Virus record (IMG/VR): IMGVR_UViG_3300028558_000791
Span: 310,001-374,000 of that record
Reading direction: 5' to 3' (one strand)
DNA length: 64,000 bases
Shown here: positions 981 to 51,412 of the stretch, piece after piece
Numbering within the stretch: the stretch's first letter is position 1
Layout: each line of letters opens with the position of its first letter
Translations under genes and position numbers: made by a program
Notes under the pieces: model-generated
What the model saw: the letters and a program-made list of their open reading frames with translations, nothing else
What the model was told of the DNA's origin: nothing
Databases searched by the model: none

Positions 981-993
981 TCCATTGGATTGC

Positions 994-1009
994 CTAATAA
1001 TTTTGCATT
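994..1009 (+). promoter_or_regulatory. Putative phage (late-type) promoter motif CTAATAATTTTGCATT
   Basis: Intergenic, 16 nt before ATG 1026; resembles motifs at 33258, 36506, 47641(-), 47713 and 54872. Confidence 0.4.
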
Positions 1010-1025
1010 ACAAGGTGGAGCCGGT

Positions 1026-1457: not shown

Positions 1458-1466
1458 GGATAGCTT

Positions 1467-8500: not shown

Positions 8501-11500
8501 CAAGGACCAACCGTTGCTGCTATCAAGAACATTGGACAAGTTATTACACATGTTGAACCTGAGGTAATTGAATCGGCATTTGAAATCTGGTCATTAGGTA
8601 GCAGCCTATTGTTCCCAGTTAGTGTGCAAACTACTGGAAGCTTCCAGCTCTTACCAGCTCACTATGGTAATGGAGTGCTCATTGATCAGCCAGAACAAAC
8701 TATTACTATGCCTGTTAATTCAAACTTACGTTTGGAAGAAGGCACATTTGAAACTTGGGTACTACCACAATGGAACGGCTTAGATAATGATGCCTCATTG
8801 GCATTCCATATAACTAGAGATGGTTATGCTATAGATCCGTATAGACTATTTATCGGAGGATCAGAGTATCATCCAGAATTAGATGGTAAGTATAACTTCA
8901 CACTAAATAAGCAGTCAAATGTTACAGGTCGTCCTAATAGGAATAAAGACGGTATTTTCATCTATTATGATAAAGATATCTCTGGCAGCTTCTACCGTTG
9001 GTATGTGGAAGTTATCGATGGATATGTGGCTCCTGACAATCATATTTACCAATTCCAGATTTTCTCCTCAGGTAAATTCTACGATGTTAAACCTATTGGT
9101 GGGGTTAAGCCATCTAATATGAGTACCTTCACTGGTACTAGTAAAGTTAATCTAACCATTAGACCATCATTTGATGGATATGGAATTGATGAAGGTATTA
9201 CTTTTGTTTCTGATGTTGAGCATTACATTTTGGACTTTGGTTTGACCAAAGATTCCAATAGACTTTCTATTTTCAAAGATGTAAGTGGATACATGAACTT
9301 CCGAGTTTATGATAGAGACCACAAGATGTATACTATTAGTGCCGATGTATCATCTTGGAAAAATAACGTACCTCACATGGTAGCAGCTTCTTGGAAGTTG
9401 AATACTAAGAACAATCGTGATGAGATGCATTTGTTCATTGATGGGTTGGAAGTTCCAAATATCATCAAGTACGGACAGAAACTACAGCCGTATCTACATG
9501 AGAAATTTAGAACTGTTAACCCAGAAGAAATAGTGGGTCTAGCAACTCGCGATATCGTTGGTTCAACAGATTTGGCCACTTTAGAAGGTTCTACTCTAGT
9601 TACATCGAGTATCAACTTTAGTGATTTTAAAGTGTTCATTGGAGATACTATCTTCATTAACGAAAATGGATTTTCTCCGGTTGGATATACGATTATCAAT
9701 ATCAATGGCCAATCATTAACTCTAAATTCGGCGATGCCTGTCACTATGAATGGTGGTAGATTCTCTGTTAATCAGACTGAGTTCCCAGTTTCATCTGAGA
9801 TTAACATTGCTCCAAATATCGCAGTAACTACAGTACATACATTTGCTACCGGCACTGATCTAACTACAATCTCGGGATCTGCTACAGTAACATCTGTTGG
9901 AACTAACTTTAGTGCGTTGGGCGTCAAACCAGGCTTCATACTAAGAATAGATAATTCTTCTTTTGCTCTAACCTATAGCATTGTTCAAGTAAGTGGTAAT
10001 TCACTCACCATTACCGATCCATCTCCACTAAGTCTATCTGGAGTTACTTTCCAGATCTACTCAAATGTAGAGAACGAAATTCCTGGTGTTAGGGCGCTTC
10101 ATCCAGCCTACAGCATTACTCAAGATGCTAATTTCAATAATATTTTGACTGTATCAAATGATGTTTTTGCTAACGATCTAATCCTAATTAGAACGCTCGG
10201 CTTAAACTTTAAGGATATCAAAAAACAATATTATGTTTGGAGTTCTCAGATAGAGAACGTTCTACAGACTCAATTGCCTCCACCAATCAATTTGGACCAG
10301 GCCAACATCACTAGAATTATTACACCAACCACTGCTATTGGTCCAGCTAATTCTACTTTAATGGCAGGCGTATTTGTTTCTAACTATCTACCAACAGCAA
10401 AACCATCTAATGCTCAAGTTGGTAGAACTATACAAGCTACTATTAGCGGTACTAACGTTGATTTCTCTGTGCCAGTACAAGTTACTATTAATGGTATTTC
10501 AGGCATTAATACAATCAATGAGACTATTACATTTACTAACTATGGTACTCTAGATTTTACTAACACTTTTGTTACAGTTAACTACGTATGGGTTAATGTT
10601 AAACCAGTCAATGCAAGTAAAAATGCATTAGCATTAGAGTTGAGAGAAAAATACCCAATGACTCATGGCGAGTCCAGTGGTCTAGTTCCAGTTATTAGAT
10701 ATAGCTATCATATCAATGGAGGTTATACTCTAGGCGGTAATGGTATTGATAATACAGTAACCGATCTAAACAATACGTTTAGTGCGCTGGATATCAACAA
10801 CTATTTGATTATCCATTCGCCACCAACTGTAGCTGGATTCTATTTGATTACCGGGCTATCTACTGATAGACACTCAATAACTATTCAGCCAACTGCCGCA
10901 TCTTTCTCAGTGCCACTACCTTATTTTGCTAACGGAGCATACCAGGTACTAAACACTACGCAATATCGTAGCGGCTTGCAAAACGGATATTTTACTCTAG
11001 AAGCTGGAGTTCTTCCAGGTCAACAGTATTTCCTTGACCAAGGATTCTATGAACTAGAGTACTCTACTTACGCTAGAATTAAGTTTGATGCTCTTAACAC
11101 CAAGATGTATATCGGAAGTGATTTCCAGGGACATAGTCAAGCAAATTCTATTATCGACCAAGCAACTATCTACTCAATCATGTTGACCGATACTAGAGTT
11201 GGTGAAGTAATTGCCCTACACAAACATTCTGTCACCAAAGATTTCAACTCTCTAAGGCCACCTAAAGCAGACTCTAATACGTTAGCGCTGATTGACTTTG
11301 ATACTTATCCATTTACTAATGATGCCAGCTTTTATGCTAGCACCAACAATGACCATAAACATTTCCAATCAGATTTTACGGTTAATGATAACTTCAGTCA
11401 GAGCTTGGTAATCTTGGATGAGCCGCTAGTTTTATCTAACGATGGAATATTGGATACTAGACATCAAGGAACTATTGAATTCTGGATGAGTCCAATATTC

Positions 11501-12712: not shown

Positions 12713-12720
12713 GAGAAGTA

Positions 12721-15700
12721 ATGACAAAGCGAGCCCCCGTATCCGTACAAAAACCAATTTGGTATGATGCCCAGCAGGTAGACGAGACCGATCTATCTTC
12801 TGAGCAGACAGCTAATGACACTATTGATGCTGCCATTATTAACAACCACATTGGAGACGGTGTTCTACCAGAGAACCTGGTGGCCAATGTTTTGTTTGAC
12901 TCCAGCCTAACCACTGGCTTTTTAGATGGTCTTGCCATTCAAACACAAGTTCAGCCCTCCGATAACAATTTCGGCAATCAACTTACCATCACCCTAACCG
13001 GCTCAAAGGCATCTGGCCATCGCCGTGTTAAAGTAGGTATTATTGGATTGGACTTTCAATCCAACTTGCAATATGAAACCTTTTATTTCAAGAGTAATGA
13101 AGTTCAAGTTAGCAGGCGCCATTTTACTAAAATTCTAGTGCTACTATTCAATGACTTTATTGGAGATGACGAGCTATCTTTCAATCTAGGTGGAAATATT
13201 GTTATTGCAGAGGCTCTGCCAATGACTCTTTCAAGAGATATTGTAATGATCTCACAAGAGCAACAGCCCAATCTATTCTTCAGAGACTTCTTCCTAGACT
13301 CTTCCATTAGTAAATTGTCTATCCAAACAATGTTGCAAGACGCGCTACCACTATACAACATAGATAGTCTCAATATCTTAGGCGCCCCACTTGATAATCT
13401 ACCAATTCTAAGTGGTGACGTTACTACTCAGATTGGACAAAAGTTTCAAGCTACCACCAATAGCGTTCAAAAGATTTCTCTATTACTATCCGTAAGAAAT
13501 CAGGTTGCAGGAAAAGAAGATGATTTAGTTTGGAGCGGAGATATTGTTGTTAGTATCTATCCTCTACAGACTAGCATTGATTGTCCAACAGACTTCTTAC
13601 CAAATCTACCAATCGATTTCTCGCCATCTAATATTCCAGTTGCTCAAATTAGCTATAACTATAATAGCTTAACTGCTGCTGGTATAGTTCTTGATTCAGT
13701 TCCACAGCCAGTAGACTTTGTATTTAGTAATAGTCCTGTTGCCGGCGGTAATCAAATGGTACCGGGCCAATACTATGCTCTTACCATTAAGCGTTCAGGT
13801 TCCGCCAATCAATGTGACATCTTAGTCGCAACTGGTCAAGATCTAATTACTAACTCCAGAATCACTACATTTACTGGGACATTATGGGTTGATATTCCTG
13901 ACCAAGATTTATGGTTTATTGTTTGGACAGATGCCGCTAAAGTGTCTGATGGACAAGCCTACGATCAAGGTCATGGTGTTACTATCCCTAAGACAACTAC
14001 CGATCCAACAACGTTGGCTACAGTAGATAATGTATTTGGTTCCAAGCAGTTCGTTGGTAATGATGTATTTAGAGCCGTTCTTGCGGCCGTTACCCAGGTT
14101 TCCGATCCTGTACCAGACCAGAGAACTGGTAACCCAGTTGATTCTCGTCAAGAATATGTTCCTCAAGTTACATTGATGAACAGCATTGACATTACCAATC
14201 TAGAAAAATCATCTGAGCCACTTATCCTTGGCGCTATCTCTGACAAGAACATTAAGTTCTTTGATGCAAGCCAGCAAATCATCAACTCTACATTGTATAG
14301 TGCTACGATGGTTAAAGATGAAATTGTTATTAGAATAGTTGATGACCCAACTGATACTGTAAGATTTGATTTATCAGTTAGTGGATTGGCAACTAGCCTA
14401 TTAAATGGTGATTTGGTTGGAGCTATTATTAGACCAGATGCTGCCGCTCCATTCACATCATATCGTTTGGCTGGCGCTAGACTATGTTCCATGATTTTAG
14501 GTGATGTAGATGGTAATGGAATTATCGATGAAAAAGATTTAGCTTTGTTGAATACGTTTGTTGGTTACAATATGAACGTTGGACTACCAGCTCATACCAA
14601 TATCGTAACAGACGGTTACACTACTACTTTCCAAAATGGATATCAAAGCCTTACTCAACCGTTCGCCAATCTATTCGGCATTAGCTTCCAGCTAATTAAC
14701 CCAAATGATGGTTCTGTTGTTGCTGCAGCTACTGATGGTGTTTTAGTTGCTAACCCATCCGATCCAACTTTAGCTCAATTTACTAGTGCGACTATACAAT
14801 TCAATACCATTGTTGGTCTCAGCTCTTACAAATTGGTTATTCTAAGCAGTGGTTCTAATGAAGCTGATTGGGGTGGCTGGAATATTACCGCACTAGACTC
14901 TAGTGTAGATGTTATTACTATTCAGAAGATATTGCTAACTGGAGACGTATTTGCCCAGATGCTAAGGGCTGATATCAACGGTGACTTTGCTGTTACTACA
15001 GCGGACGGATACTTACTCGGTAGTTACATTGATAGACTTCCAACCACGGCTATCCCTCCAGCTACATATCCAGCTCCAAGCACAAATCCATATACTAAAA
15101 TTGGAACTCGTTTTAACGTTATTAGATTAAGAGTGGAAGAGTTAGTAGATAGACTTGATGATTATACTGCTGATCCTAATACTCGTGCATTGACCGTCCA
15201 TCCACAACAAGACATCTTCTCTGGTGATGGTTACTTCGCCAACCATAATTTCTATACATCTCCAATCCAAATGGCTTTTACCAAGCAATTGGTCTGGGAC
15301 GCTTCATTGGTTATTACTAACGCTCATCCAAAGCTAGTACCAAGTGTATTCACGTCTGAAACTGGTGTTGTTCATAATGCTTGTGAGATAGAAGGCATTC
15401 AATGCAATGTCTATCCAGTCCCACAACCATTCGATCCAGGCAAGGTAGACTTCTTTGTACCTAACAACCTCATCATCGGTGATGGTGAGCTACAGCGTCC
15501 AGACGGATATTTCTACAAAGTAGACTTTGAAGTTGGTACAGTCGTTCTAGAGATTCCAGACGGATTGTTTGGTTCAGAACGAACTATTGACATCATGAAT
15601 GATTTTATCTCTGATTACACAGGCAATGGTGCGACTCGTCTTGGATTCCCATCCATGAGATTTGCAGACTGCTCTTATGTGCAGAGAGATGCTCTATCAA

Positions 15701-16746
15701 AGGATCAAATTAGATTTTCGGTTTCTGTGCAGTCTTTCTCACCAAATACAGCCGGTTTGAGTCCCGATGGATATACGGGAGCCATTGTAGATGGTAAGAT
15801 GGGTGTAAGCGTAGACTTTGAAACCGGCTTGCTCACATTGAACTTCAGTAATTTGTATCAGGACCCAACCCTCTTGACTCTAAGTACCAAGGTACAAGTC
15901 AATGTGTTCTTGAAGAAGGGCGGGTTTAACAACATGCCAATCTTCGTAGACTCTACTAAGGTCCAGAACATGCTAAGTTTGATTAGTGTCTTCAGCGGTG
16001 CCAATGATGGCGGCCCATCTGCTCTAGTAGATTTAGGTAATGATGTAACTGGAATCCTACCAATCTTGAATGGTGGTACCGGTCTCAATGCAGTAGGAGC
16101 TTTCGGAACCGTGCTCACAAGCACCGGAAGCGGACTAAGCTATCAATTCATTAATACTTTGCTCAACGTCATTCCATTCTCTAGTGGTATCCCATCTGCT
16201 GATAAGGTTCCAAAGCTTGATGGTTATGGATTCCTAGACCCAAGCTTTATGTACAAACAACCAATGTATATTGTTGGTGTGGCTGGAAACTACTCTAATG
16301 ATGGATATATTCCATCAGCCATTGGCGCCCTTACATTTAGACTAGATAGCTTCATTCTAGAAGGTCTAGATAGTATTAAGCTAGAGTGTATTCTAGAAAC
16401 TACTAATGTGGCTAGCACAGCAGGTCTACAGCTATTTAATGTAGATAACCACACTTATGTTCCTCTTAATGGATCTAGTACGGCTTTGATAACTACCAAT
16501 GTACAAGCAACGTACTTAGTATCTCAGGACCTAAAGGGATTGTTATACACGGGAGCTACGAACTTTGTATATGAAATCCATCTATTCTCGAATCCTGGTG
16601 GTTCATTGGATACGGGTATCTGCAAGATGGCAAGATTGGTTATGACATACAACAATTTGACTTTGAATGGAGTCTCTGCAATTGCACCTCCAGTATCTCA
16701 TAGCTACAACTTCGTACCGTTCCTACCAAGCCCAACTCCATCATAA
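12721..16746 (+). CDS. Large virion structural protein with dockerin/EF-hand-like repeats (1341 aa)
   Basis: N-terminal WYDAQQVDETDLSSEQ; GDVDGNGIIDEKDL and ADINGDFAVTTAD repeats; GILPILNGGTG fibre-like motif; last gene of the structural operon. Confidence 0.6.
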   Translation: MTKRAPVSVQKPIWYDAQQVDETDLSSEQTANDTIDAAIINNHIGDGVLPENLVANVLFDSSLTTGFLDGLAIQTQVQPSDNNFGNQLTITLTGSKASGHRRVKVGIIGLDFQSNLQYETFYFKSNEVQVSRRHFTKILVLLFNDFIGDDELSFNLGGNIVIAEALPMTLSRDIVMISQEQQPNLFFRDFFLDSSISKLSIQTMLQDALPLYNIDSLNILGAPLDNLPILSGDVTTQIGQKFQATTNSVQKISLLLSVRNQVAGKEDDLVWSGDIVVSIYPLQTSIDCPTDFLPNLPIDFSPSNIPVAQISYNYNSLTAAGIVLDSVPQPVDFVFSNSPVAGGNQMVPGQYYALTIKRSGSANQCDILVATGQDLITNSRITTFTGTLWVDIPDQDLWFIVWTDAAKVSDGQAYDQGHGVTIPKTTTDPTTLATVDNVFGSKQFVGNDVFRAVLAAVTQVSDPVPDQRTGNPVDSRQEYVPQVTLMNSIDITNLEKSSEPLILGAISDKNIKFFDASQQIINSTLYSATMVKDEIVIRIVDDPTDTVRFDLSVSGLATSLLNGDLVGAIIRPDAAAPFTSYRLAGARLCSMILGDVDGNGIIDEKDLALLNTFVGYNMNVGLPAHTNIVTDGYTTTFQNGYQSLTQPFANLFGISFQLINPNDGSVVAAATDGVLVANPSDPTLAQFTSATIQFNTIVGLSSYKLVILSSGSNEADWGGWNITALDSSVDVITIQKILLTGDVFAQMLRADINGDFAVTTADGYLLGSYIDRLPTTAIPPATYPAPSTNPYTKIGTRFNVIRLRVEELVDRLDDYTADPNTRALTVHPQQDIFSGDGYFANHNFYTSPIQMAFTKQLVWDASLVITNAHPKLVPSVFTSETGVVHNACEIEGIQCNVYPVPQPFDPGKVDFFVPNNLIIGDGELQRPDGYFYKVDFEVGTVVLEIPDGLFGSERTIDIMNDFISDYTGNGATRLGFPSMRFADCSYVQRDALSKDQIRFSVSVQSFSPNTAGLSPDGYTGAIVDGKMGVSVDFETGLLTLNFSNLYQDPTLLTLSTKVQVNVFLKKGGFNNMPIFVDSTKVQNMLSLISVFSGANDGGPSALVDLGNDVTGILPILNGGTGLNAVGAFGTVLTSTGSGLSYQFINTLLNVIPFSSGIPSADKVPKLDGYGFLDPSFMYKQPMYIVGVAGNYSNDGYIPSAIGALTFRLDSFILEGLDSIKLECILETTNVASTAGLQLFNVDNHTYVPLNGSSTALITTNVQATYLVSQDLKGLLYTGATNFVYEIHLFSNPGGSLDTGICKMARLVMTYNNLTLNGVSAIAPPVSHSYNFVPFLPSPTPS

Positions 16747-16759: not shown

Positions 16760-16787
16760 TTGACATCCTAATTTTTAAGGCTACAAT
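16760..16787 (+). promoter_or_regulatory. Sigma70-like promoter TTGACA-N16-TACAAT
   Basis: Near-consensus -35/-10 in the intergenic gap before ORF 16829. Confidence 0.6.
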
Positions 16788-16828: not shown

Positions 16829-17530
16829 ATGAGACGAGAAAAATGGTGGAAAATTTTCCATCTACCATCTCCAAAGGAGCTGGGGTGGACTACTAGCGAG
16901 TACAATGCGTTACCAATGGCTTTGTTCAAGAAAGCTAATGATGATACTCCTACTTGGGAAGACTGGGACGCAAAGATGCGTAAAGAGTATCCAGTGAGAT
17001 ATTTCTTTGCGGAGACTGTCCCCTATTGGTTTAGTACTATGATTAGAAGACGCGTCAAGGATGCTTGGTACTGGTTTAAATGCCACGTGTTACCCAGCCA
17101 CCAATATCATATGTTAGATCTTAGGCAGCCTAAGAACGAGTTCATGCACAGTTACAAATGGGGTTGGATTGATTCCGATACCAAAATTCTGTATGCACTC
17201 TTTAACATTCTCAATACTTTTGTCAAGGAAGAGCTGCCCCATATGTATTGCCCTAGTGAAGAGGATGTACAAACGGATGCTCACCTATTGCATCAACGTA
17301 ATCACTATCTAGAAATCAAGGCCATTCATTACTGGTGGAATGTTGAAAGATTACGCCAGAATAAGAATCACGCTGATGTTCTTTCTGCTTGGTCAGATGC
17401 TAAACATGCCAGCGATCCCAAAGAACACCAACTCTGGGATGATTTAAAGAAAATTGAAGCTGCCAATGAAGCCAAAGAGGATGAAATGATGGGCAGGCTA
17501 ATCAAGATCCGACGTTCTTTATGGACCTGA
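16829..17530 (+). CDS. Hypothetical phage protein (Trp-rich, C-terminal EDEMMGRLIKIRRSLWT)
   Basis: Clean ORF downstream of a promoter; function not recognised. Confidence 0.7.
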   Translation: MRREKWWKIFHLPSPKELGWTTSEYNALPMALFKKANDDTPTWEDWDAKMRKEYPVRYFFAETVPYWFSTMIRRRVKDAWYWFKCHVLPSHQYHMLDLRQPKNEFMHSYKWGWIDSDTKILYALFNILNTFVKEELPHMYCPSEEDVQTDAHLLHQRNHYLEIKAIHYWWNVERLRQNKNHADVLSAWSDAKHASDPKEHQLWDDLKKIEAANEAKEDEMMGRLIKIRRSLWT

Positions 17531-17543: not shown

Positions 17544-18680
17544 ATGAAGATTTGTTGGTTTGGATTTCTTGGAAAAAATCATAGTTGGTCAATTGTTGCA
17601 CAGAATCTCTCTAGAGAGTTTGTTAGGATGGGGCACCAGGTAGACTTGTTCTCCACCAATGGTACAGATCATTTTCCAGAAGATTTGAAACCATATCTAA
17701 AAGGTTCCATCACCGAAGATGAAGGCGTAGCCCCTGAGCAATTCTATGCTAAGGTGGCATCCAAGCTAGATGCCAATTATGATATGCAAATGTCGTATAC
17801 GGCACTCCGTAATTTCTGCAATTATTTCAGTAGAGGCGAAACCAATAGATTTGGTATTTGGAATTACGAAACAACCAAACTGCCCACCGCATTCTCTAGA
17901 TTTGGCAAGTGTGTAGATTTAGTTCTACCCTCATCTGAATTTTCTAAGAAGATTTTCACTGACAACGGAATGGCAGCAGATCACCAAGTGGTAGTGCCAC
18001 ATGGCATCTATCTTGATAGATTTGCCAACCTGGGAAAGTATCCTCTCAAAACTAAAAAGAAGTATAAGATACTGGCTAACATTGCACAGCCCCATTTACG
18101 AAAGAACATACCGGGGTTGCTAAGAGCATTTGGTAAAGCTTTTACTAGGAAAGATGATGTATGTTTGGTGCTGAAAGTCGCTCGTAAGAGCCCTCAGCCA
18201 GGATTTGATGTGCCGTTTAACGATATCATGGCTCGTTGGCAAAAGGAATTTCCTCAGCACGCTGAAGTTGAAATTATCGACAAGTTCATTGTCGATATTG
18301 AAACTCTTTACAATGCTTGTGACGTTGTATATACTATGGCACATGCTGAATGTTTCTGGATGCCTGGTCTAGAAGGATTTGCGGCTAACAAGATTGTTGT
18401 AGCTCCACGCTATGGCGGTCAGCTTGACTATATGAATGATGAGAACTCTATCCTAATAGATGGTAAGATAATTAGGGCCGACGTACGTATGCAATATTGG
18501 GAACCATCTTCATATGCAGAAGTATTTGATCCAAATCAAGATCAAGCCGCCGAGAAGCTCAAGCACCTCATCGCAAACTATGATGACTACCTAAAGAAAT
18601 TCTCTCCGGGCATGCAAGAGACGGCACATAAGTTTACGTGGGAGAATGCGGCCAAACAAATTATAGGACTATGTAAATGA
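17544..18680 (+). CDS. Glycosyltransferase, GT4/GT-B family
   Basis: RKNIPGLLRAF, LYNACD, ECFWMPGLEGFA (E-x7-E), FTWENAA motifs. Confidence 0.85.
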   Translation: MKICWFGFLGKNHSWSIVAQNLSREFVRMGHQVDLFSTNGTDHFPEDLKPYLKGSITEDEGVAPEQFYAKVASKLDANYDMQMSYTALRNFCNYFSRGETNRFGIWNYETTKLPTAFSRFGKCVDLVLPSSEFSKKIFTDNGMAADHQVVVPHGIYLDRFANLGKYPLKTKKKYKILANIAQPHLRKNIPGLLRAFGKAFTRKDDVCLVLKVARKSPQPGFDVPFNDIMARWQKEFPQHAEVEIIDKFIVDIETLYNACDVVYTMAHAECFWMPGLEGFAANKIVVAPRYGGQLDYMNDENSILIDGKIIRADVRMQYWEPSSYAEVFDPNQDQAAEKLKHLIANYDDYLKKFSPGMQETAHKFTWENAAKQIIGLCK

Positions 18681-19468
18681 CCGATCCAAAGAAAGTTGAA
18701 CTTGGTTTCACGGTGAAAGAAAAAATTGGTATTGGAATAGTAAACCCACGGGGAATCTATCGATCCCTTAGTATTGTTATTCCTGTGTTCAATAAGTGGA
18801 ACTTTACCAAGTCTTGTCTGAATGACTTAGCTCAGCTACCAGAAGATCATGAAATCATTATCATCGATAATGCTAGTTCAGATGAAACTCAACAAGAAAT
18901 CGAGAAACTAATCAATGACCTTAGAGAAAAATATCCTTCAAGCGCTTACGTCCGTTATGTTAGGAATGAAGAAAACACTTTTCACTCTAAAGCTTGCAAT
19001 CAAGGCTTTAAAATCGCGAGTGGTGAAAATGTTCTGTTCCTGAACAATGATATTAGAGTTAGGGCTAACCATACAGGTTGGACCAAAGCTATCATTGATG
19101 CTTGTAAGGCTGGTGGAATAGTAGGGCCGACCATGGGACTACTAGATAAAGATCTAAACTTCGTTAAAGAGGCTAACCAGCAACTAACTGGTAATTGTTA
19201 TCTAGGTGGTTGGTGCATTGCTGCCTCAAAAGAGACTTGGAAGCGGTTGGACACTGGTGATAATAAAGTTTGGAATGAAGACTTCCCGTTCTATTTCAAT
19301 GACACTGATTTGAGTTTTCGTGCTCGTCAGAAGAAAGTAGCATTGACTGTAATCGCTGTGCCAGAGGTAGCCCATTTTGGCAAAGTGTCTGCTGCCCAGA
19401 TCAACATTCCAAAATTATATCAAGAAGGTAGAAATGTCTTTCTCAAGAAGTGGGCAAGGGGCCGTTAA
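18677..19468 (+). CDS. Glycosyltransferase, GT2/GT-A family
   Basis: SIVIPVFN, IIIIDNASSD, FLNND, YFNDTDLSFRA motifs. Confidence 0.85.
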   Translation: MTDPKKVELGFTVKEKIGIGIVNPRGIYRSLSIVIPVFNKWNFTKSCLNDLAQLPEDHEIIIIDNASSDETQQEIEKLINDLREKYPSSAYVRYVRNEENTFHSKACNQGFKIASGENVLFLNNDIRVRANHTGWTKAIIDACKAGGIVGPTMGLLDKDLNFVKEANQQLTGNCYLGGWCIAASKETWKRLDTGDNKVWNEDFPFYFNDTDLSFRARQKKVALTVIAVPEVAHFGKVSAAQINIPKLYQEGRNVFLKKWARGR

Positions 19469-19523
19469 TTCGGTTGGCAAATGCCATTTTGGTAAATGGT
19501 ATCTTCATCAAACGTCTGAGAAG

Positions 19524-19805
19524 ATGGATGCGTGGAAGAAGCCTGTTGTAGATCCGATCCAGGATATTATGGTTGTAGACGGTTACATACGAATCATTCG
19601 TCAAAATATAGATGTGGCCTCTCAAAAATTCGAATACAGTATTTTCTTTGTTGGTGAAGCAAATTTTTTGAGAGAGCATTTCAAAAGTTTTAGGCCAGAA
19701 TACGAAGATCATACAACTAAACTTGAATTTGAAAGTATTCAGGCCGCTAAAGATTATATTGACAAATTCATTGAGCGATTAGACAATCTCATAGCATTCA
19801 TCTAA
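19524..19805 (+). CDS. Hypothetical protein with C-terminal RLDNLIAFI tag
   Basis: Fills the gap between GT2 and Fpg; start uncertain (track start 19377 overlaps the upstream gene). Confidence 0.55.
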   Translation: MDAWKKPVVDPIQDIMVVDGYIRIIRQNIDVASQKFEYSIFFVGEANFLREHFKSFRPEYEDHTTKLEFESIQAAKDYIDKFIERLDNLIAFI

Positions 19806-19821
19806 TAGGAGTATATGTGTT

Positions 19822-20658
19822 ATGCCGGAAGGCCCCGAAGTTAAACTCAGTGCAGATTTGATTAGACCATTAGTTGTTGGAAAGAAAGTTATCAATGCTT
19901 TCCCAGGAAAGAATAGTAGATATGCTGGTAGTAACCCAGAAGGATTTGCTAAGTTTTTAGATTCTCTTTCTGAAGTGGAAGTAAGAGTAACTGAGATAAA
20001 TATTGTAGGTAAGTTTATGTACTGGAAGTTTAGTAATGAGTGGTATCTCATGAATACTTTTGGTATGAGTGGACAATGGTCTGCGGAGGCTGGTAAACAT
20101 CCTAGTTTTGGATTCTACTTTAGTGAAAATTGGCCTAATATTGAGTCTACTATGTACTTCAATGACCCGCGCCATTTCGGTACCATTAAGTTTGTGAATT
20201 CCAAGAAAGAGCTAGAGAAAAAACTTCAGGAATTAGGCTGGGATCCCTTGTCGATGCCCCTTGACAAAAGCCTAAAGTGGCTTACATTTCAGCTATCAAA
20301 AAGCAGTAAATCCATTGCGGAAGCGTTGATGGACCAAGGCTTATTTTCAGGCGTTGGAAACTATATTAGGGCCGAAGCGTTATATGCATGTAAGATTTCC
20401 CCGTGGCGCAAAGCTAATCAACTTTCCCAGGATGAGGTCAAAACTTTGTGCCAAGCTATCGTTGATGTAATGCAAGAGTCATATCAACAACAAGGTGCTA
20501 CCATTCATACTTACAAGACTGCGTATGGCGAAGAAGGTAAGTATTCAGGTTTCTTTAAAGTATACGGTAAAGCAAAAGACCCATTAGGCAATAAGATAAT
20601 CAAACAACAGACACCAGATAAAAGAACTATTCACTGGTGTCCTGACATTCAAGTATAA
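19822..20658 (+). CDS. Fpg/Nei-family DNA glycosylase/AP lyase
   Basis: N-terminal MPEGPEV, FGMSG, DPRHFG, H2TH GVGNYIRAEAL, C-terminal RTIHWCPDIQ. Confidence 0.9.
   Translation: MPEGPEVKLSADLIRPLVVGKKVINAFPGKNSRYAGSNPEGFAKFLDSLSEVEVRVTEINIVGKFMYWKFSNEWYLMNTFGMSGQWSAEAGKHPSFGFYFSENWPNIESTMYFNDPRHFGTIKFVNSKKELEKKLQELGWDPLSMPLDKSLKWLTFQLSKSSKSIAEALMDQGLFSGVGNYIRAEALYACKISPWRKANQLSQDEVKTLCQAIVDVMQESYQQQGATIHTYKTAYGEEGKYSGFFKVYGKAKDPLGNKIIKQQTPDKRTIHWCPDIQV
20261..20288 (+). promoter_or_regulatory. Internal sigma70-like promoter TTGACA-N16-TACATT
   Basis: Same geometry as the promoters at 16760 and 51413 but inside the Fpg gene. Confidence 0.35.
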
Positions 20659-20668
20659 GGTATCATTC

Positions 20669-21661
20669 ATGTCTCCTACATTAATCAAAATCCTCGTAGC
20701 CGTTGGTGCTGTATTGACCATTGGCGTTGTAGGTCTAATCATCTACAATCAAATTCAAATCAGAAAACAGAATGATGCTATTCAATCTCAATTAGTTGAA
20801 CAACGATCATTAGTTGACGGCATTGTAAGAAGCCAGAATCAATATGCCACCAAGAGTGATGTTGATAAGTTTGCTAAGGACAATGGCATTAACCTAAACG
20901 CTATTCAATCTGATCTGGACAAACTACATGGAGAGATTAGCGCCGTAAACGTAGCCATCTCTACCAGCCAAGGCCAGCATGGCACCAACATTCCAAGCGT
21001 CAAGCCTACTCCAAGCAACCCAGTCAACCCTAACCCGGTGGACCCAGCCAACCCGGATCCTTTTGGTTATCAAAAATCTCAGCAGAATTTGGCTTTGAAT
21101 GAAGACTTCGGCACAATCAAGGTTCCGTTTGGCAGTGTCGGCTTCTCTGCTTGGCAGAAAGACCCATGGAGCGTGGATGTTAATCCAAGACAATACAACG
21201 TAGACACGGTTGTTGGGACTGACGAGAACCAGAGACAGTATTTCTACAATAAGTTTAGCGTAGTCACTGGAGATAAAACGTACGAAATCCCAATCAAGAC
21301 AGCTACTACTAAGCAAGAGTTCCCGACTGCTAAGTGGAGTTGGTGGAATCCAAGACTCCTAATGGGTCTGGATGGTGGCGTCAACATCACTAATGTCAAA
21401 GGAGAATTCACGCCACATGTTGGCGTTGGCATTATGTCCTATGGACAGTATAAAACTACGCCAGACTTCTCAATCTTAGAGGTGGGTGTAGGGTATGGAA
21501 CCATAAACAAGACTGGTCAAGTAGTGGTTACACCAGTTGCCTACAACATAGGTAAGAATCTGTTCTCACCACTGATGAACAACACATATATTGGCCCAAG
21601 CCTTTCAATTGGCACTGACGGTTCCATTGGAGCTGGAGCGGGCGTAAGGGTAGGTTTTTGA
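20669..21661 (+). CDS. Membrane-anchored protein: N-terminal TM helix, coiled coil, C-terminal beta-strand domain ending in Phe
   Basis: ILVAVGAVLTIGVVGLIIY TM; heptad region; Pro/Asn linker; amphipathic strands ending GAGAGVRVGF. Confidence 0.6.
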   Translation: MSPTLIKILVAVGAVLTIGVVGLIIYNQIQIRKQNDAIQSQLVEQRSLVDGIVRSQNQYATKSDVDKFAKDNGINLNAIQSDLDKLHGEISAVNVAISTSQGQHGTNIPSVKPTPSNPVNPNPVDPANPDPFGYQKSQQNLALNEDFGTIKVPFGSVGFSAWQKDPWSVDVNPRQYNVDTVVGTDENQRQYFYNKFSVVTGDKTYEIPIKTATTKQEFPTAKWSWWNPRLLMGLDGGVNITNVKGEFTPHVGVGIMSYGQYKTTPDFSILEVGVGYGTINKTGQVVVTPVAYNIGKNLFSPLMNNTYIGPSLSIGTDGSIGAGAGVRVGF

Positions 21662-22500
21662 TGTTACATATTCTCACTTTGACATGGAACGCTGCTGATA
21701 AGCTATCTAAATTGCATGAGACTCTTATGCCTGCTCTAGAAGGTATTGATTTCAAATGGTGGATCAAGGATAACGCTTCTAAAGATGATACAGTAGCCGT
21801 GGCCTCTACATGGGGAGATAAGGTAACTGTTATCCCTTACAAGGATAACCGCCAGAACTTCTCTGAAGGCTGCAACTTTCTCTTCAATGAGGCAAAACCC
21901 GCTGATGATGATTATGTCATGTTACTAAACAATGATATCGTTTTCAATGATACTGATTCTATCAAGAAGATGTTGGCCATTATTGAAAATGATGATTCAG
22001 TAGGAATGGTAGGCGCCCGCTTACTGTACACCAACACTGATCAGCTTCAGCACTGTGGCGTGGTATTCAATCCAACCTATAAGACTCCAATGCATTTCCG
22101 TGCAGGTCAGAAATCAGACAATGATGCCGAGCGAGATCGCGAGTTCCAAGTAGTCACTGGCGCCGTTTGTATCACCAAAGCAGAATACTTCCGTAAGGCT
22201 AATACGACCACTAAGTCTGGTATTGCTGGAATGGATGAGAGCTATCATTGGGCTTTTGATGATGTGGATTTGTGTCTGTCCATTAAGTACAATCTAAAGA
22301 AGAAAATTGTGTATTGTGGTAGGACCAATATCTTCCATGAAGAAAGTGCATCTCTCAAGAAGAACCAAGTCAATAAACTATTTTTGACTCACAACCTACA
22401 ATATCTTTTTGGAAAATGGCAGGGCCGCTACGATATAGATCAGGAAGCCTATGCTAAGGATTCCAGGCTCAACCTTTATCGAGGTCCTAGTGTCGGTTGA
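21658..22500 (+). CDS. Glycosyltransferase, GT2 family
   Basis: IKDNASKD, NFSEGCN, LLNND, VTGAVC, FDDVDLCL, HEESAS motifs. Confidence 0.85.
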   Translation: MMLHILTLTWNAADKLSKLHETLMPALEGIDFKWWIKDNASKDDTVAVASTWGDKVTVIPYKDNRQNFSEGCNFLFNEAKPADDDYVMLLNNDIVFNDTDSIKKMLAIIENDDSVGMVGARLLYTNTDQLQHCGVVFNPTYKTPMHFRAGQKSDNDAERDREFQVVTGAVCITKAEYFRKANTTTKSGIAGMDESYHWAFDDVDLCLSIKYNLKKKIVYCGRTNIFHEESASLKKNQVNKLFLTHNLQYLFGKWQGRYDIDQEAYAKDSRLNLYRGPSVG

Positions 22501-22711
22501 GTTAGGGTTGTACCAGCACTCCAAGGGCGGCCTTTACTGGGTAATTGGTATTGGAAAACACTCAGAGACTTTAGAGGAGATGGTTGTATATCAAAAGTAT
22601 TATGGCCCTGACGATCTTGGTGAAATATGGGTTCGACCTTTAAGCATGTGGTCTGAAGAAGTGAAACCTGGAGTTCCTCGTTTCCGAAAAGTAGATGATG
22701 TTGTGAAATAA
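22490..22711 (+). CDS. DUF1653-like protein
   Basis: GLYQHSKGGLYWVIGIGKHSETLEEMVVY...WVRPLSMW; probable GTG start at 22490. Confidence 0.75.
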   Translation: MSVELGLYQHSKGGLYWVIGIGKHSETLEEMVVYQKYYGPDDLGEIWVRPLSMWSEEVKPGVPRFRKVDDVVK

Positions 22712-22718
22712 GGTGTAA

Positions 22719-23693
22719 ATGAAAAAAGTTCTTGTAACAGGTACATGTGGTTTTATCTTTAGTAACTTTATTCGTAAAGCCATCTACGACCAAAATCAGA
22801 GAAGATCTCAAGATAAGGATTACACTTTTGTTAGCGTAGACCGTGTTACGGCTAATGCCATCAATTCTATGTATTGGAACAAGAACCATATCTTCCACCC
22901 GGCTGACATTCGTGACCAACATGTCATGGATGTAATCTTCCAATTTGAGAAGCCAGATATTGTTATCCATGGAGCGGCTGAGACCTTCGTGGATACATCG
23001 TTGAAAGACCCGAACTCTTTCGTAACCTCTAATGTGCTAGGCACCCAAGTTATCATTAACTCGTGCCTCAAACACAAAGTGGAGAGGATGATTTACATTT
23101 CCACAGATGAAGTGTATGGTCACCTTACCAGCGAGTCAGAGGCCGCCTGGAAGGAAGATGCGCCCCTCAATCCTAGAAACCCCTATTCAGCCTCTAAGGC
23201 TGCCGGGGAGCTAATGGTCAGAGCAGCCCACCAGACTCATGGATTAATTTATAACATTACTAGAAGCTCCAACTGCTATGGTCCCCGCCAGCTTCCTGAA
23301 AAGCTGGTGCCCAAGGCAATAAAGTGTGTTATGGATGGACAGAAAATCCCAATTTACGGTCAAGGTCAACAGATTAGAGATTGGACCTATGTAGCAGATA
23401 ATTGTACTGCCATAATGACAGTTTTAAACCAAGGTAAACCTAATGAGGTTTACAATATTTCCGCTAATCAGGAATTTACCAATATTGAAACTATTAACTT
23501 AGTTTGTAATGCCATGGGTAAGGGTCACGACTTGATATCCTTCATTCCAGATCCGAGAACCGGGCATGATTTTAGGTACGCGATTGATACTAGTAAAATT
23601 CGAGAGCTGGGCTGGAAGCCAACTTACAAATTTAAGGATGGCATCAGAGATACAGTACAGTGGTATCTAGATAACCAATGGTTTTTGAAGTGA
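22719..23693 (+). CDS. rmlB: dTDP-glucose 4,6-dehydratase (RmlB/RfbB-like SDR)
   Basis: VTGTCGFIFSNF, AAETFVD, ISTDEVYG, YSASKAA, NCYGPRQLPEKL, IRDW, GHDFRYAID. Confidence 0.9.
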   Translation: MKKVLVTGTCGFIFSNFIRKAIYDQNQRRSQDKDYTFVSVDRVTANAINSMYWNKNHIFHPADIRDQHVMDVIFQFEKPDIVIHGAAETFVDTSLKDPNSFVTSNVLGTQVIINSCLKHKVERMIYISTDEVYGHLTSESEAAWKEDAPLNPRNPYSASKAAGELMVRAAHQTHGLIYNITRSSNCYGPRQLPEKLVPKAIKCVMDGQKIPIYGQGQQIRDWTYVADNCTAIMTVLNQGKPNEVYNISANQEFTNIETINLVCNAMGKGHDLISFIPDPRTGHDFRYAIDTSKIRELGWKPTYKFKDGIRDTVQWYLDNQWFLK

Positions 23694-51027: not shown

Positions 51028-51034
51028 GATAAAC

Positions 51035-51406: not shown

Positions 51407-51412
51407 TAGGGG

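What the first reader, a model, noticed from the sequence alone, without database searches (positions are those of the whole stretch)
17544..23693. Phage glycosylation toolkit directly downstream of the DGY-rich structural operon
Seen: GT4, GT2, GT2 and an RmlB-like dehydratase within 6 kb, plus a divergent GT-B protein and HAD phosphatase at 52-53.7 kb. Established: RmlB makes dTDP-4-keto-6-deoxyglucose, the precursor of rhamnose-type sugars; some phages glycosylate virions or DNA; Tyr O-glycosylation occurs in some bacterial S-layers. Inference: these could build a glycan on virion proteins, possibly at the DGY tyrosines. No base-hydroxymethylase for DNA glycosylation is visible in this window.
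Basis: partly seen in the sequence, partly recalled or inferred. Interest (0 to 1): 0.6.

Follow-up and report, generated by a model that had tools for sequence, protein, structure and literature searches.

The report
Huge-phage core rhamnose glycosylation gene set
A 481-kb soil phage, distantly related to Bacillus phage G, carries a conserved set of genes that can make activated L-rhamnose and attach sugars with four soluble glycosyltransferases. This resembles the self-contained glycosylation machinery of giant viruses, but what gets glycosylated is still unknown.

Summary
Window 17544-23693 encodes a GT4-type transferase, two GT2 transferases and an RmlB-type 4,6-dehydratase.

The window lies in a 480,838-bp phage record from rhizosphere metagenomes. 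Elsewhere the genome encodes an RmlA-like nucleotidyltransferase. Next to that sits a bifunctional 3,5-epimerase/4-reductase of the plant/Mimivirus type. This explains the missing RmlC and completes a three-enzyme NDP-L-rhamnose route.

In 25 related loci and two full-length relatives, GT4, GT2a, GT2b, RmlB, RmlA+ER and the 52-kb GT-B are conserved and syntenic. They are core genes, among the better-conserved ones. A second GDP-sugar cluster is strain-specific.

The genome has no ThyA-type hydroxymethylase and no ORF with more than five predicted membrane-spanning segments, so no Wzx/Wzy/OTase-like protein.

The best reading is a cytoplasmic, phage-autonomous rhamnose-glycan system acting on a phage-determined acceptor, most likely virion proteins. 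The acceptor is inferred, not shown. The DGY motif is statistically real, but nothing links it to the transferases. A conserved sigma-70-like promoter separates the module from the baseplate operon.

The parts
990..16746 (+). Upstream context, a baseplate operon. It comprises a gp25-like sheath initiator (990-1457), a Baseplate_J fusion protein (1467-5561), a 2384-aa protein with a ConA-like lectin domain (5558-12712) and a 1341-aa protein (12721-16746). DGY motifs number 3, 5 and 7.
   Evidence: phrog_2669 4e-15; PF04865 1.7e-25 and phrog_6 2.2e-39; PF13385 4.5e-6. DGY counts against shuffles. Syntenic in all 25 related loci.
16760..16787 (+). Sigma-70-like promoter candidate (TTGACA, 16 nt, TACAAT; 11 of 12 matches) in the 82-nt gap between the last baseplate gene and p233.
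   Evidence: Best-scoring site in 12-28 kb. Sites with 10-11 of 12 matches lie in the same gap in about eight distinct relatives. The regional count of promoter-like sites is not above shuffles, so this is suggestive only.
16829..17530 (+). p233, a Trp-rich protein of no known family. It is a variable member, present in 14 of 25 related loci.
   Evidence: No Pfam, PHROG or NCBIfam match. Presence and absence across loci.
17544..18680 (+). GT4-type (GT-B, retaining-type EX7E) soluble glycosyltransferase. It is the most conserved transferase of the module.
   Evidence: phrog_2170 1.8e-24; Pfam GT4/GT1 just below cut-off. Profile against PDB: 7mi0 glycosyltransferase 1.6e-8, PBCV-1 B736L 7.7e-3. 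Invariant E269/E277. 63-84% identity in 25 loci. More than 1000 metagenome clusters. No TM segment.
18677..19468 (+). GT2a, a GT-A fold family-2 glycosyltransferase. Its start overlaps the GT4 stop by 4 nt.
   Evidence: PF00535 74.3 bits. Invariant DNGS..D and NND motifs in 18 orthologues. Absent in L021 and L025.
19377..19805 (+). Small conserved ORF of unknown function. The real start is probably internal, since a 121-aa gene is called at this position in a close relative.
   Evidence: Weak tblastn conservation in 5 loci. Gene called at L089 11825-12190. No family match.
19822..20658 (+). Fpg/Nei-family DNA glycosylase/AP lyase. It is a DNA-repair enzyme, not a glycosyltransferase, and is a variable member of the locus.
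   Evidence: TIGR00577 1.7e-45; PF06831 and PF01149. N-terminal catalytic P2/E3 present. Missing in several relatives.
20669..21661 (+). p330. It has an N-terminal membrane anchor, a long helix, a Pro/Cys-rich linker and a C-terminal all-beta meander ending in ...RVGF. It has no known family and its stop overlaps the GT2b start.
   Evidence: Hydropathy 2.67 over residues 8-26. 19-sequence alignment A1. AF2 pLDDT 74. No Foldseek PDB hit at E<=1e-3, and the weak rows are beta-barrels. VIA Z 9.5 to a designed beta-barrel over residues 225-330. Only an uncharacterised orthologue in BFVD.
21658..22500 (+). GT2b, a second GT-A family-2 glycosyltransferase.
   Evidence: PF00535 38.8 bits and PF13712 24.5 bits. 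Invariant KDN.S.D and NND motifs. 54-87% identity in relatives.
22451..22711 (+). Small DUF1653 ORF between GT2b and RmlB.
   Evidence: The orthologous 90-aa gene in L089 carries PF07866. Translation.
22719..23693 (+). RmlB-type NDP-glucose 4,6-dehydratase (extended SDR).
   Evidence: TIGR01181 354.8 bits (cut-off 365.1); PF16363 207.9 bits. PDB 2hun 2.8e-73 and nine further dTDP-glucose dehydratases. TDE and YxxxK motifs. 52-89% identity in relatives.
52090..53067 (+). GT-B glycosyltransferase of the GT1 / MJ1255-VC2487 (PF13528) type. It is conserved in the lineage.
   Evidence: TIGR00661 4e-10. PF13528 on many of 634 homologues. AF2 pLDDT 63, confident in the C-terminal half only. Foldseek best matches are dTDP/UDP-deoxysugar GT1 enzymes (SpnP 6e-8, CalG3, OleD, VinC, SpnG), not T4 beta-GT. 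46-49% identity in G001 and G002.
53064..53708 (+). HAD-superfamily phosphatase-like protein, a weak assignment. Its start overlaps the GT-B stop.
   Evidence: NF006991 glucose-1-phosphatase 3.6e-7 and TIGR01993 pyrimidine 5'-nucleotidase 1.6e-4, both far below cut-off. No Pfam match at 1e-3. Present in G002, not found in G001.

Best explanation
The window holds the central part of a lineage-core, phage-autonomous glycosylation system.

**Sugar supply.** This step is supported by homology and motifs.
- An RmlA-like enzyme (G000 175994-176731) would make NDP-glucose from glucose-1-phosphate.
- The window's RmlB-type dehydratase would convert it to NDP-4-keto-6-deoxyglucose.
- The SDR next to RmlA (G000 176773-177621) is a bifunctional 3,5-epimerase/4-reductase of the plant NRS/ER and Mimivirus L780 type. 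It would finish NDP-L-rhamnose without an RmlC.

**Transfer.** This step is inferred. Four soluble transferases with no TM segments would build a short rhamnose-containing glycan in the cytoplasm. They are GT4 (retaining type), GT2a and GT2b (inverting type), and the GT1-type GT-B at 52 kb.

**Acceptor.** This is inferred and is the weakest step.
- The set is conserved, syntenic and slowly evolving across a lineage that shares only about 40% of its genes.
- The phage encodes no lipid-carrier, flippase, polymerase or oligosaccharyltransferase machinery and no source of hydroxymethyl bases.
- The acceptor is therefore most likely phage-determined, with virion proteins the leading candidate, modified directly in the cytoplasm before or during assembly. 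Mycobacteriophages and giant viruses glycosylate their particles in this way.

This genome's extra GDP-sugar cluster (Gmd, Fcl-like, aminotransferase, N-acetyltransferase, methyltransferases, two GTs) would add strain-specific decoration.
For: - **Enzyme identities:**
- **RmlA-like:** PF00483 163 bits; TIGR01208 196.6 bits.
- **ER:** 4qqr Arabidopsis 3,5-epimerase/4-reductase 3.9e-41 and 7jid Mimivirus UDP-L-rhamnose synthase 3.2e-23. The GCI(F/Y), YSKTK, PRNxI and IPNSMT blocks align.
- **No RmlC in the genome:**, with the control ringing in 11 of 14 genomes.
- **Synteny:** 25 IMG/VR loci keep bigB-bigC-GT4-GT2a-p330-GT2b-RmlB-TubZ.
- **Conservation in full-length relatives G001 and G002:** cluster A, RmlA+ER and GT-B are kept at 46-71% identity. 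GT4, RmlB and GT2b mostly sit around the 80th-90th percentile of identity among shared genes, although GT2b falls to the 57th against G002. Only 193 of 515 ORFs are shared by all three genomes.
- **Accessory clusters:** the GDP-sugar and pyruvyltransferase clusters are absent from those relatives.
- **Membrane machinery:** all transferases lack TM segments, and no ORF in the genome has more than 5 predicted TM segments.
- **Hydroxymethyl base source:** no ThyA-family protein in G000, G001 or G003. Where ThyA is present (G002, G004) it scores as ordinary ThyA at 329-338 bits, and G000 has ThyX.
- **GT-B fold:** it resembles dTDP-deoxysugar GT1 enzymes, including a rhamnosyltransferase, and not T4 beta-GT.
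- **Precedents:** virion glycosylation by phage GTs as cited in PMC12619734 (Freeman et al. 2023); the Mimivirus R141/L780 and PBCV-1 GMD/GMER pathways (PMC4691112).
Against: - No direct evidence identifies any acceptor.
- A conserved sigma-70-like promoter after the baseplate operon and the downstream genes (TubZ, GH25, UvsW) suggest the module is not part of the late structural transcript.
- p330, embedded in the cluster, is membrane-anchored. This hints at a membrane-proximal process.
- The GT-B's closest folds act on small lipophilic molecules.
- Soluble GT2/GT4 enzymes commonly work on host undecaprenyl-linked intermediates without needing phage-encoded flippases.
- Iyer et al. 2021 (PMC7824862) interpret jumbo-phage sugar clusters as host surface remodelling.
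- RmlB and RmlA score below NCBIfam equivalog cut-offs, so nucleotide specificity (dTDP or UDP) and even the final sugar remain predictions.
- No RNA data exist for this phage.
Confidence: 0.45

Rival explanations
1. Host-envelope remodelling. The soluble transferases act at the inner face of the host membrane on host undecaprenyl-linked or wall-polymer intermediates. Host flippases and ligases then export the product. The result changes LPS, capsule, teichoic-acid or S-layer glycans during the long infection of a huge phage, to block superinfection or release progeny from debris. p330 would anchor or organise the enzymes at the membrane.
For: - This is the published interpretation of sugar clusters in jumbo phages (PMC7824862, read).
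- GT2a's nearest NCBIfam models are EPS, teichuronic-acid and Und-P transferases, though all far below cut-off.
- p330 has a strong N-terminal membrane anchor and lies inside the cluster.
- This genome also has a CsaB-like polysaccharide pyruvyltransferase with a GT1 and a strain-specific GDP-sugar cluster. These look like surface-polysaccharide genes.
- The sigma-70-like promoter suggests expression independent of the late genes.
Against: - The core set is conserved, syntenic and slowly evolving over relatives that share only about 40% of genes. The published argument for host O-antigen diversification rests on sporadic, polymorphic clusters (PMC7824862).
- The phage has no flippase, polymerase, initiating phosphoglycosyltransferase or ligase candidate, since no ORF has more than 5 TM segments.
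- The phage makes its own rhamnose donor by a non-bacterial-type ER, as giant viruses do for virion glycans.
Confidence: 0.27
2. The acceptor is a non-virion phage or cell component. Candidates are a small molecule or lipid (a glycolipid or secondary-metabolite-like product made by the GT1-type enzyme) or p330 itself as a membrane-anchored glycoprotein. The role would lie in infection physiology rather than particle structure.
For: - The GT-B's best structural matches are natural-product and small-molecule GT1 enzymes using dTDP/UDP-deoxysugars.
- p330 is conserved within the cluster, has a Pro-rich linker typical of O-glycosylated spacers, and is translationally coupled to GT2b.
- The GT-B sits among non-structural genes: a FAD oxidoreductase, a DnaQ-like exonuclease and a HAD.
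Against: - The GT-B model is low-confidence in its acceptor (N-terminal) domain, with pLDDT 33-59. Acceptor inference from it is therefore weak.
- G001 and L023/L026 lack p330 but keep the transferases and RmlB.
- No polyketide, NRPS or other aglycone pathway was seen in the regions scanned. The whole genome was not scanned for these.
Confidence: 0.15
3. DNA hypermodification. The transferases glycosylate modified bases in the phage genome to evade restriction, and the embedded Fpg/Nei glycosylase is part of base handling.
For: - An Fpg/Nei DNA glycosylase lies between GT2a and p330.
- The GT-B is coupled to a DnaQ-like exonuclease and a HAD with a weak pyrimidine-nucleotidase match.
- GT-A and GT-B enzymes glycosylate 5hmC in other phages (bioRxiv 10.1101/2023.12.21.572611).
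Against: - Known pathways need a 5-hydroxymethylpyrimidine source, either a ThyA-like hydroxymethylase or a 5mYOX/TET enzyme, usually clustered with the GT.
- ThyA is absent from G000, G001 and G003. It is present, with ordinary thymidylate-synthase scores, only in G002 and G004, so it does not track the GT set.
- There is no Tet_JBP match, although the control was uninformative.
- Fpg is missing in several relatives that keep the GTs.
- The GT-B does not resemble T4 beta-GT among the top matches.
- To my knowledge no DNA modification uses rhamnose or a dTDP-6-deoxyhexose donor.
Confidence: 0.05

Closest known systems
Giant-virus autonomous glycosylation (Mimivirus R141/L780 UDP-L-rhamnose pathway plus GT cluster; PBCV-1 GMD/GMER plus GTs)
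   Same: - Virus-encoded 4,6-dehydratase plus a single-domain bifunctional 3,5-epimerase/4-reductase, with no cupin RmlC.
- Several soluble virus-encoded GTs.
- In this genome, also a Gmd plus Fcl-like pair, an aminotransferase and an N-acetyltransferase, as in the Mimivirus viosamine branch.
- The ER hits Mimivirus L780 (7jid) at 3.2e-23 (PMC4691112).
   Different: - The host is a prokaryote and the virus is a tailed phage.
- An RmlA-like nucleotidyltransferase is also encoded.
- The dehydratase is closest to bacterial and archaeal dTDP-glucose dehydratases, not to UDP-glucose dehydratases.
- The genes are split over three loci.
- Glycan on the particle has not been shown.
Mycobacteriophage virion glycosylation (Che8-type; Freeman et al. 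2023, as cited in PMC12619734)
   Same: - Phage-encoded soluble GTs lie next to structural genes.
- Cytoplasmic glycosylation of virion proteins is the proposed mode.
- Methyltransferases accompany the GTs in some relatives (L020, L025).
   Different: - Those phages rely on host sugar nucleotides.
- GT4 finds no mycobacteriophage homologue by tblastn at E<=1e-5; GT2a and GT2b were not searched against phage records.
- Here a promoter-like site separates the module from the structural operon.
- The acceptor is unknown.
Jumbo cyanophage and other jumbo-phage 'LPS/capsule' sugar clusters (Iyer et al. 2021, PMC7824862)
   Same: - NAD-dependent epimerase/dehydratases, nucleotidyltransferases, several GT families, methyltransferases and HAD phosphatases in large phage genomes.
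- The accessory GDP-sugar cluster of this genome fits this description well.
   Different: - Those clusters are described as sporadic and polymorphic between related phages.
- The rhamnose and GT core here is conserved and syntenic across the lineage.
Bacterial RmlABCD dTDP-L-rhamnose pathway
   Same: - RmlA-like and RmlB-like enzymes are present.
- The predicted end product is the same.
   Different: - No RmlC.
- RmlD is replaced by an NRS/ER-type bifunctional enzyme.
- The genes are not in one operon.
- RmlA and RmlB score below equivalog cut-offs.
Phage DNA glycosylation (T4 alpha/beta-GT; 5mYOX/ThyS-linked GT clusters, Pyle et al.)
   Same: GT-A and GT-B enzymes are encoded by a phage, with an epimerase/dehydratase nearby.
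   Different: - No hydroxymethylase or TET partner.
- The GT-B is not T4 beta-GT-like.
- The donor pathway leads to a 6-deoxyhexose.

Membership tests
dTDP-glucose 4,6-dehydratase (RmlB, TIGR01181) | Score above the curated equivalog cut-off | tested here: not met
   354.8 bits against a cut-off of 365.1, a narrow miss. It is the best model by more than 100 bits over the alternatives.
dTDP-glucose 4,6-dehydratase (RmlB, TIGR01181) | Extended-SDR catalytic residues: the Thr/Asp/Glu of the TDE motif and Tyr-x3-Lys | tested here: met
   STDEVYG and YSASK read in the translation. The ten best PDB relatives are all dTDP-glucose 4,6-dehydratases. The N-terminal glycine motif is a GxxGxxF variant.
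dTDP-glucose 4,6-dehydratase (RmlB, TIGR01181) | Uses dTDP-glucose rather than UDP- or another NDP-glucose | not testable with these tools
   Needs an enzyme assay.
Classical bacterial RmlABCD pathway | A separate cupin 3,5-epimerase RmlC | tested here: not met
   No PF00908 match in the 480,838-bp genome. The control ringed in 11 of 14 genomes.
Classical bacterial RmlABCD pathway | RmlA glucose-1-phosphate thymidylyltransferase | tested here: inconclusive
   PF00483 163 bits. TIGR01208 and TIGR01207 are the best models, but their 196.6 and 173.9 bits fall below the cut-offs of 320 and 361.
NRS/ER-type bifunctional NDP-4-keto-6-deoxyglucose 3,5-epimerase/4-reductase | Single SDR domain homologous to Arabidopsis NRS/ER and Mimivirus L780, with the conserved Cys-containing GCI block and YxxxK | tested here: met
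   4qqr 3.9e-41 over residues 19-268. 7jid 3.2e-23. The GCIY, YSKTK, PRNLI and IPNSMT blocks align.
CAZy GT4 / Pfam Glycos_transf_1 (GT-B retaining) | Pfam score above gathering threshold | tested here: inconclusive
   PF13439 28.0 against 28.5. PF00534 25.3 against 26.4, or 27.2 when scored in the genome frame. Most homologues carry both domains in precomputed Pfam.
CAZy GT4 / Pfam Glycos_transf_1 (GT-B retaining) | C-terminal EX7E motif | tested here: met
   E269 and E277 are invariant in 21 orthologues.
Glycosyltransferase family 2 (PF00535) | Score above gathering threshold and DXD-type metal/donor motifs | tested here: met
   GT2a 74.3 bits and GT2b 38.8 bits against a cut-off of 23.3. 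Invariant D..D and NND motifs.
Phage virion-protein glycosylation system | Glycan covalently attached to capsid or tail proteins | not testable with these tools
   Needs glycoproteomics or glycostaining of particles. No isolate exists and no RNA or protein data were found.
Phage virion-protein glycosylation system | GT genes associated with the structural gene block | tested here: inconclusive
   The module lies directly after the baseplate genes in all 25 loci. A promoter-like site intervenes, and non-structural genes follow.
Phage DNA glycosylation system | A source of 5-hydroxymethylpyrimidine (ThyA-like hydroxymethylase or 5mYOX/TET) | tested here: not met
   No PF00303 match in G000, G001 or G003. 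No PF12851 match in G000, but the control was silent, so that half is weak.
Wzx/Wzy- or Gtr-type surface-polysaccharide conversion | Phage-encoded multi-pass membrane components (flippase, polymerase, GtrA/GtrC, initiating transferase, ligase) | tested here: not met
   A Kyte-Doolittle scan of 515 ORFs finds at most 5 segments in any ORF and none in any GT. The method is crude, and host components could substitute.

The most novel reading that the evidence does not exclude
A widespread lineage of roughly 430-510-kb soil and freshwater phages, distantly related to Bacillus phage G, runs an autonomous cytoplasmic protein-glycosylation system as part of its core genome.

- The system has its own three-enzyme L-rhamnose pathway, built around a eukaryote/giant-virus-type epimerase-reductase.
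- Four dedicated transferases coat virion proteins (baseplate/fibre or capsid) with a rhamnose-containing glycan.
- Strain-specific GDP-sugar, methyl and pyruvyl decorations are added on top.

This would be a prokaryotic-virus counterpart of giant-virus fibril and capsid glycosylation. p330 would be a new membrane-anchored component of it.
Probability: 0.35. Interest if true: 0.7.

Novelty: new variant of a known kind. Interest (0 to 1): 0.5.

Why it matters
Sugar-nucleotide and transferase genes in large phages are usually written off as sporadic auxiliary genes that remodel the host surface. Here a complete rhamnose route and four transferases belong to the conserved core of a very large, abundant and uncultured phage lineage. 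More than 1000 GT4 clusters were found, on contigs up to 506 kb.

The route also uses an enzyme type known from plants, protists and giant viruses. That type is essentially absent from 50,697 GenBank phage records.

If the acceptor is the virion, self-sufficient particle glycosylation evolved in prokaryotic viruses as genome size grew, in parallel with giant viruses. That would bear on phage recognition by hosts, defence systems and predators in soil.

The enzymes can be tested directly by expression, even without an isolate.

Tried and rejected
- **Close cultured relative:** megablast of 17-24 kb against 50,697 phage records found no match. By protein, the nearest cultured relative is Bacillus phage G, at only 23-30% identity.
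- **GT4 in cultured phages:** only one weak hit, Microcystis phage Mel-JY01 at 22.5%. No annotated precedent for the transferase was found.
- **Moraphages (PMC12619734):** considered and rejected as the same lineage. Their genomes reach only 307 kb, and that paper gives only a generic GT discussion.
- **Freeman et al. 2023:** could not be read. It is cited only through PMC12619734.
- **p330:** the fold prediction was adequate (pLDDT 74). Foldseek/PDB, VIA-wide and BFVD gave only generic beta-barrel or coiled-coil resemblance, so no function is assigned.
- **GT-B model:** only the C-terminal half is confident, so its acceptor preference is not interpreted.
- **Tet_JBP search:** silent in the genome and also in all controls, so uninformative.
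- **'Provirus' label and the GC-rich 420-480 kb end:** I checked whether this is host DNA that could name the host. It is not. The genes are phage-like accessory ones (RNA ligase, AAA ATPase, RadC, DUFs) and none is shared with relatives.
- **DGY against GT content:** the GT set hardly varies.
- **Expression data:** only three DNA runs from rhizosphere metagenomes were found and no RNA.

Full report
**What is in the window**

The stretch 16.8-23.7 kb is a tight, co-oriented gene row on the + strand.

| Gene | Coordinates | Main evidence |
|---|---|---|
| p233 | 16829-17530 | no family |
| GT4-type transferase | 17544-18680 | phrog_2170 1.8e-24; Pfam GT4/GT1 just under threshold |
| GT2a | 18677-19468 | PF00535, 74.3 bits |
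| small conserved ORF | 19377-19805 | no family |
| Fpg/Nei DNA glycosylase | 19822-20658 | TIGR00577 1.7e-45 |
| p330 | 20669-21661 | no family |
| GT2b | 21658-22500 | PF00535, 38.8 bits |
| DUF1653 ORF | 22451-22711 | PF07866 on the orthologue |
| RmlB-type dehydratase | 22719-23693 | TIGR01181 354.8 bits (cut-off 365.1); PDB 2hun 2.8e-73 |

Several neighbours overlap by 4 nt, namely GT4/GT2a and p330/GT2b.

The catalytic signatures are intact:
- EX7E in GT4, with E269 and E277 invariant in 21 orthologues;
- D..D and NND motifs in both GT2 enzymes;
- TDE and YxxxK in RmlB.

**Context**

The genes upstream form a myovirus baseplate module. It comprises a gp25-like protein, a 1364-aa Baseplate_J fusion, a 2384-aa protein with a ConA-like lectin domain, and a 1341-aa protein.

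Downstream come a TubZ/PhuZ-like tubulin, small ORFs, a GH25 lysozyme and a UvsW-like helicase.

The window is bases 310001-374000 of a 480,838-bp IMG/VR virus record. The sequence occurs in rhizosphere metagenomes. The nearest cultured relative is Bacillus phage G, and it is distant, with tubulin at 23% and Baseplate_J at 30% identity.

**The rest of the sugar toolkit in the genome**

- An NTP_transferase whose best models are glucose-1-phosphate thymidylyltransferases lies at G000 175994-176731.
- Directly after it is a 282-aa SDR. Its only solved relatives are the Arabidopsis bifunctional 3,5-epimerase/4-reductase (4qqr, 3.9e-41) and the Mimivirus UDP-L-rhamnose synthase (7jid, 3.2e-23). 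The characteristic sequence blocks align.
- The genome has no cupin RmlC.

Together with the window's dehydratase, this gives a complete three-enzyme route to NDP-L-rhamnose. The layout is that of eukaryotes and giant viruses (PMC4691112), not the bacterial RmlABCD layout. This ER type is almost absent from 50,697 GenBank phage records, with only two weak hits. It is common in metagenomes, including contigs of about 480 kb.

Three further sugar-related loci were found:
- **GDP-sugar cluster (G000 157.3-167.1 kb, minus strand).** It encodes an Fcl-like enzyme, Gmd (TIGR01472 429 bits, above cut-off), a methyltransferase, a DegT/LegC-type aminotransferase, a NeuD/PglB/VioB-type N-acetyltransferase, two unknowns, a GT, a methyltransferase fusion and a GT2.
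- **Pyruvyltransferase locus (G000 85.7-88 kb).** A CsaB-like pyruvyltransferase sits next to a GT1.
The 325-aa protein is a GT-B enzyme of the PF13528/TIGR00661 type, and the HAD assignment for its neighbour is weak. The GT-B's predicted fold best matches GT1 enzymes that transfer dTDP/UDP-deoxysugars, such as SpnP, CalG3, OleD, VinC and the rhamnosyltransferase SpnG. It does not match T4 beta-glucosyltransferase. Only the C-terminal half of that model is confident.

**Conservation**

The GT4 protein recovers 25 IMG/VR loci at 63-84% identity. All of them keep the order bigB-bigC-(p233)-GT4-GT2a-(Fpg)-p330-GT2b-RmlB-TubZ.
- Fpg and p233 come and go.
- L021 and L025 lack GT2a, and wholly or partly lack GT2b.
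- L023 and L026 lack p330.

I fetched two near-complete relatives, G001 (433 kb) and G002 (448 kb), and compared all 515 ORFs of at least 100 aa.
- Only 193 ORFs are shared by all three genomes.
- Cluster A, the RmlA+ER pair and the GT-B are among the shared ones.
- GT4 and RmlB lie at the 81st-91st percentile of identity among shared genes. GT2b is at the 79th (G001) and 57th (G002).
- The GDP-sugar cluster and the pyruvyltransferase/GT1 pair are absent from both relatives.

There is thus a lineage-core rhamnose and transferase set plus strain-specific additions. In other relatives the variable slots inside the cluster hold GIY-YIG homing endonucleases, SAM methyltransferases directly after GT4, and FGE-sulfatase/C-type-lectin-fold proteins after the last baseplate gene.

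**What is the acceptor?**

*DNA.*
- Known DNA glycosylation needs a 5-hydroxymethylpyrimidine source, usually encoded next to the transferase.
- The genome has no ThyA-family protein, only ThyX.
- Among relatives, ThyA is present in two, with ordinary thymidylate-synthase scores, and absent in two. It does not track the transferases.
- No Tet/JBP match was found, though that control was uninformative.
- Fpg is dispensable in relatives.
- DNA is therefore unlikely.

*Host surface polymers.*
- The phage encodes no protein with more than five predicted membrane segments, and no transferase has any. It supplies no flippase, polymerase, initiating transferase or ligase.
- Soluble GT2 and GT4 enzymes could still act on host lipid-linked intermediates.
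- Iyer et al. 2021 read jumbo-phage sugar clusters this way. Their argument rests on such clusters being sporadic and polymorphic among related phages. The accessory clusters here fit that description, but the core set does not.

*A phage-determined acceptor.*
- A conserved acceptor best explains conserved, slowly evolving, syntenic transferases together with a private donor pathway.
- Virion proteins are the leading candidate, by analogy with mycobacteriophages (cited in PMC12619734) and giant viruses.
- This remains inference. I rate it 0.45, against 0.27 for host-envelope remodelling, 0.15 for another intracellular or membrane acceptor including p330 itself, and 0.05 for DNA.

**Points against leaning on adjacency**

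The best sigma-70-like site in 12-28 kb (TTGACA, 16 nt, TACAAT) lies exactly in the 82-nt gap between the last baseplate gene and p233. Sites with 10-11 of 12 matches occupy the same gap in about eight distinct relatives. The regional count of such sites is not above chance, so this is a lead and not a finding. It does suggest that the sugar module heads its own transcription unit with the non-structural genes that follow.

**The DGY idea**

DGY is genuinely over-represented in the three large baseplate proteins. The counts are 3, 5 and 7 against shuffle means of 0.20, 0.51 and 0.25. In the 1341-aa protein, 7 of 17 DG dipeptides are followed by Tyr. Four of those seven sites are conserved in 15 orthologues.

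Nothing connects this motif to glycosylation.
- The S-layer route for Tyr O-glycosylation uses a multi-pass membrane oligosaccharyltransferase outside the cytoplasm. The phage lacks one, and cytoplasmic virion assembly would not meet it (established knowledge).
- Relatives with fewer transferases have DGY counts within the normal range.
- Other large ORFs elsewhere in the genome are equally DGY-rich.

**p330**

This conserved 330-aa protein has four parts:
- a strongly hydrophobic N-terminal segment;
- a long helix;
- a Pro/Cys-rich linker;
- an all-beta C-terminal domain ending in a hydrophobic ...RVGF/L.

Fold searches give only generic beta-barrel resemblance. It could tether the system to the membrane, be an acceptor, or be unrelated. 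It is the least understood conserved member of the locus.

**Verdict**

The thing itself is a new variant of a known kind. Phage sugar-nucleotide and transferase clusters are known. This one differs in three ways:
- it is a core, syntenic component of a huge-phage lineage;
- it includes a complete rhamnose route;
- that route uses a eukaryote/giant-virus-type epimerase-reductase not seen in cultured phages.

The acceptor is the open question, and it can be addressed by expressing the genes.

Noticed in passing
window 20669-21661: p330 is a conserved protein of no known family inside the GT cluster. It has an N-terminal membrane anchor, a long helix, a Pro/Cys-rich linker and a C-terminal beta-meander ending in ...RVGF. 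Its resemblance to beta-barrel and outer-membrane-protein-like folds is only weak. It is lost in L023, L026 and G001.
   Followed up: partly
G000 157269-167055 (locus L036 9269-10222 and L005 219-9055), minus strand: A second, strain-specific GDP-sugar cluster. It encodes an Fcl-like enzyme, Gmd, a methyltransferase, a DegT/LegC-type aminotransferase, a NeuD/VioB-type N-acetyltransferase, two unknowns, a Glyco_trans_1_2 GT, a 596-aa methyltransferase fusion and a GT2. It is absent from relatives G001 and G002, except for the methyltransferase domain.
   Followed up: partly
G000 85774-88032 (locus L037 1774-4032): A CsaB-like polysaccharide pyruvyltransferase (TIGR03609 5e-14) sits next to a 426-aa GT1-family transferase. 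Neither was found in G001 or G002.
   Followed up: partly
G000 420001-480838 (loci L085-L088): G+C rises from about 0.41 to 0.49-0.55, and almost no genes are shared with relatives. The ORFs are short and phage-like (RNA ligase, AAA ATPase, RadC, trypsin-like protease, DUF7275), not host chromosome. The IMG/VR 'provirus' label therefore looks doubtful. A 498,445-bp contig carries an identical GT-B protein, so the record may be trimmed.
   Followed up: partly
window 23719-25077: A TubZ/PhuZ-like tubulin lies directly after RmlB. It is among the most conserved genes of the lineage, at the 93rd-96th percentile. Its only cultured-phage relative is Bacillus phage G gp138, at 23% identity.
   Followed up: partly
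G000 393824-394366; L038, L039: Thymidylate synthase type differs among relatives. G000 has ThyX, with a ThyX homologue in G001. G002 and G004 have ThyA instead.
   Followed up: partly
L020, L021, L023, L025, L028, L030, L032 (gaps within the cluster): The variable slots of the cluster in relatives hold GIY-YIG/NUMOD3 homing endonucleases, SAM methyltransferases right after GT4 (L020, L025), and FGE-sulfatase-domain (C-type-lectin-fold) proteins between the last baseplate gene and GT4 (L030, L032).
   Followed up: partly
window 49819-52093: A GidA/TrmFO-like FAD-dependent oxidoreductase (402 aa) lies just upstream of a DnaQ-like 3'-5' exonuclease (209 aa). The exonuclease's stop overlaps the start of the GT-B gene. 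The function of this grouping is unknown.
   Followed up: no
window 1467-16746; also G000 383831-386815, 284602-289125, 98306-99553 and window 41354-42193 (-): The DGY tripeptide is strongly over-represented in several large proteins. In the 1341-aa protein, 7 of 17 DG dipeptides are followed by Tyr, and four sites are conserved in 15 orthologues. This is probably a structural turn motif of beta-rich fibre proteins. It was not investigated further.
   Followed up: partly
window 16829-17530: p233 is Trp-rich and Gly-poor, has no family match, and is the first gene after the promoter-like site. It is present in 14 of 25 related loci.
   Followed up: no
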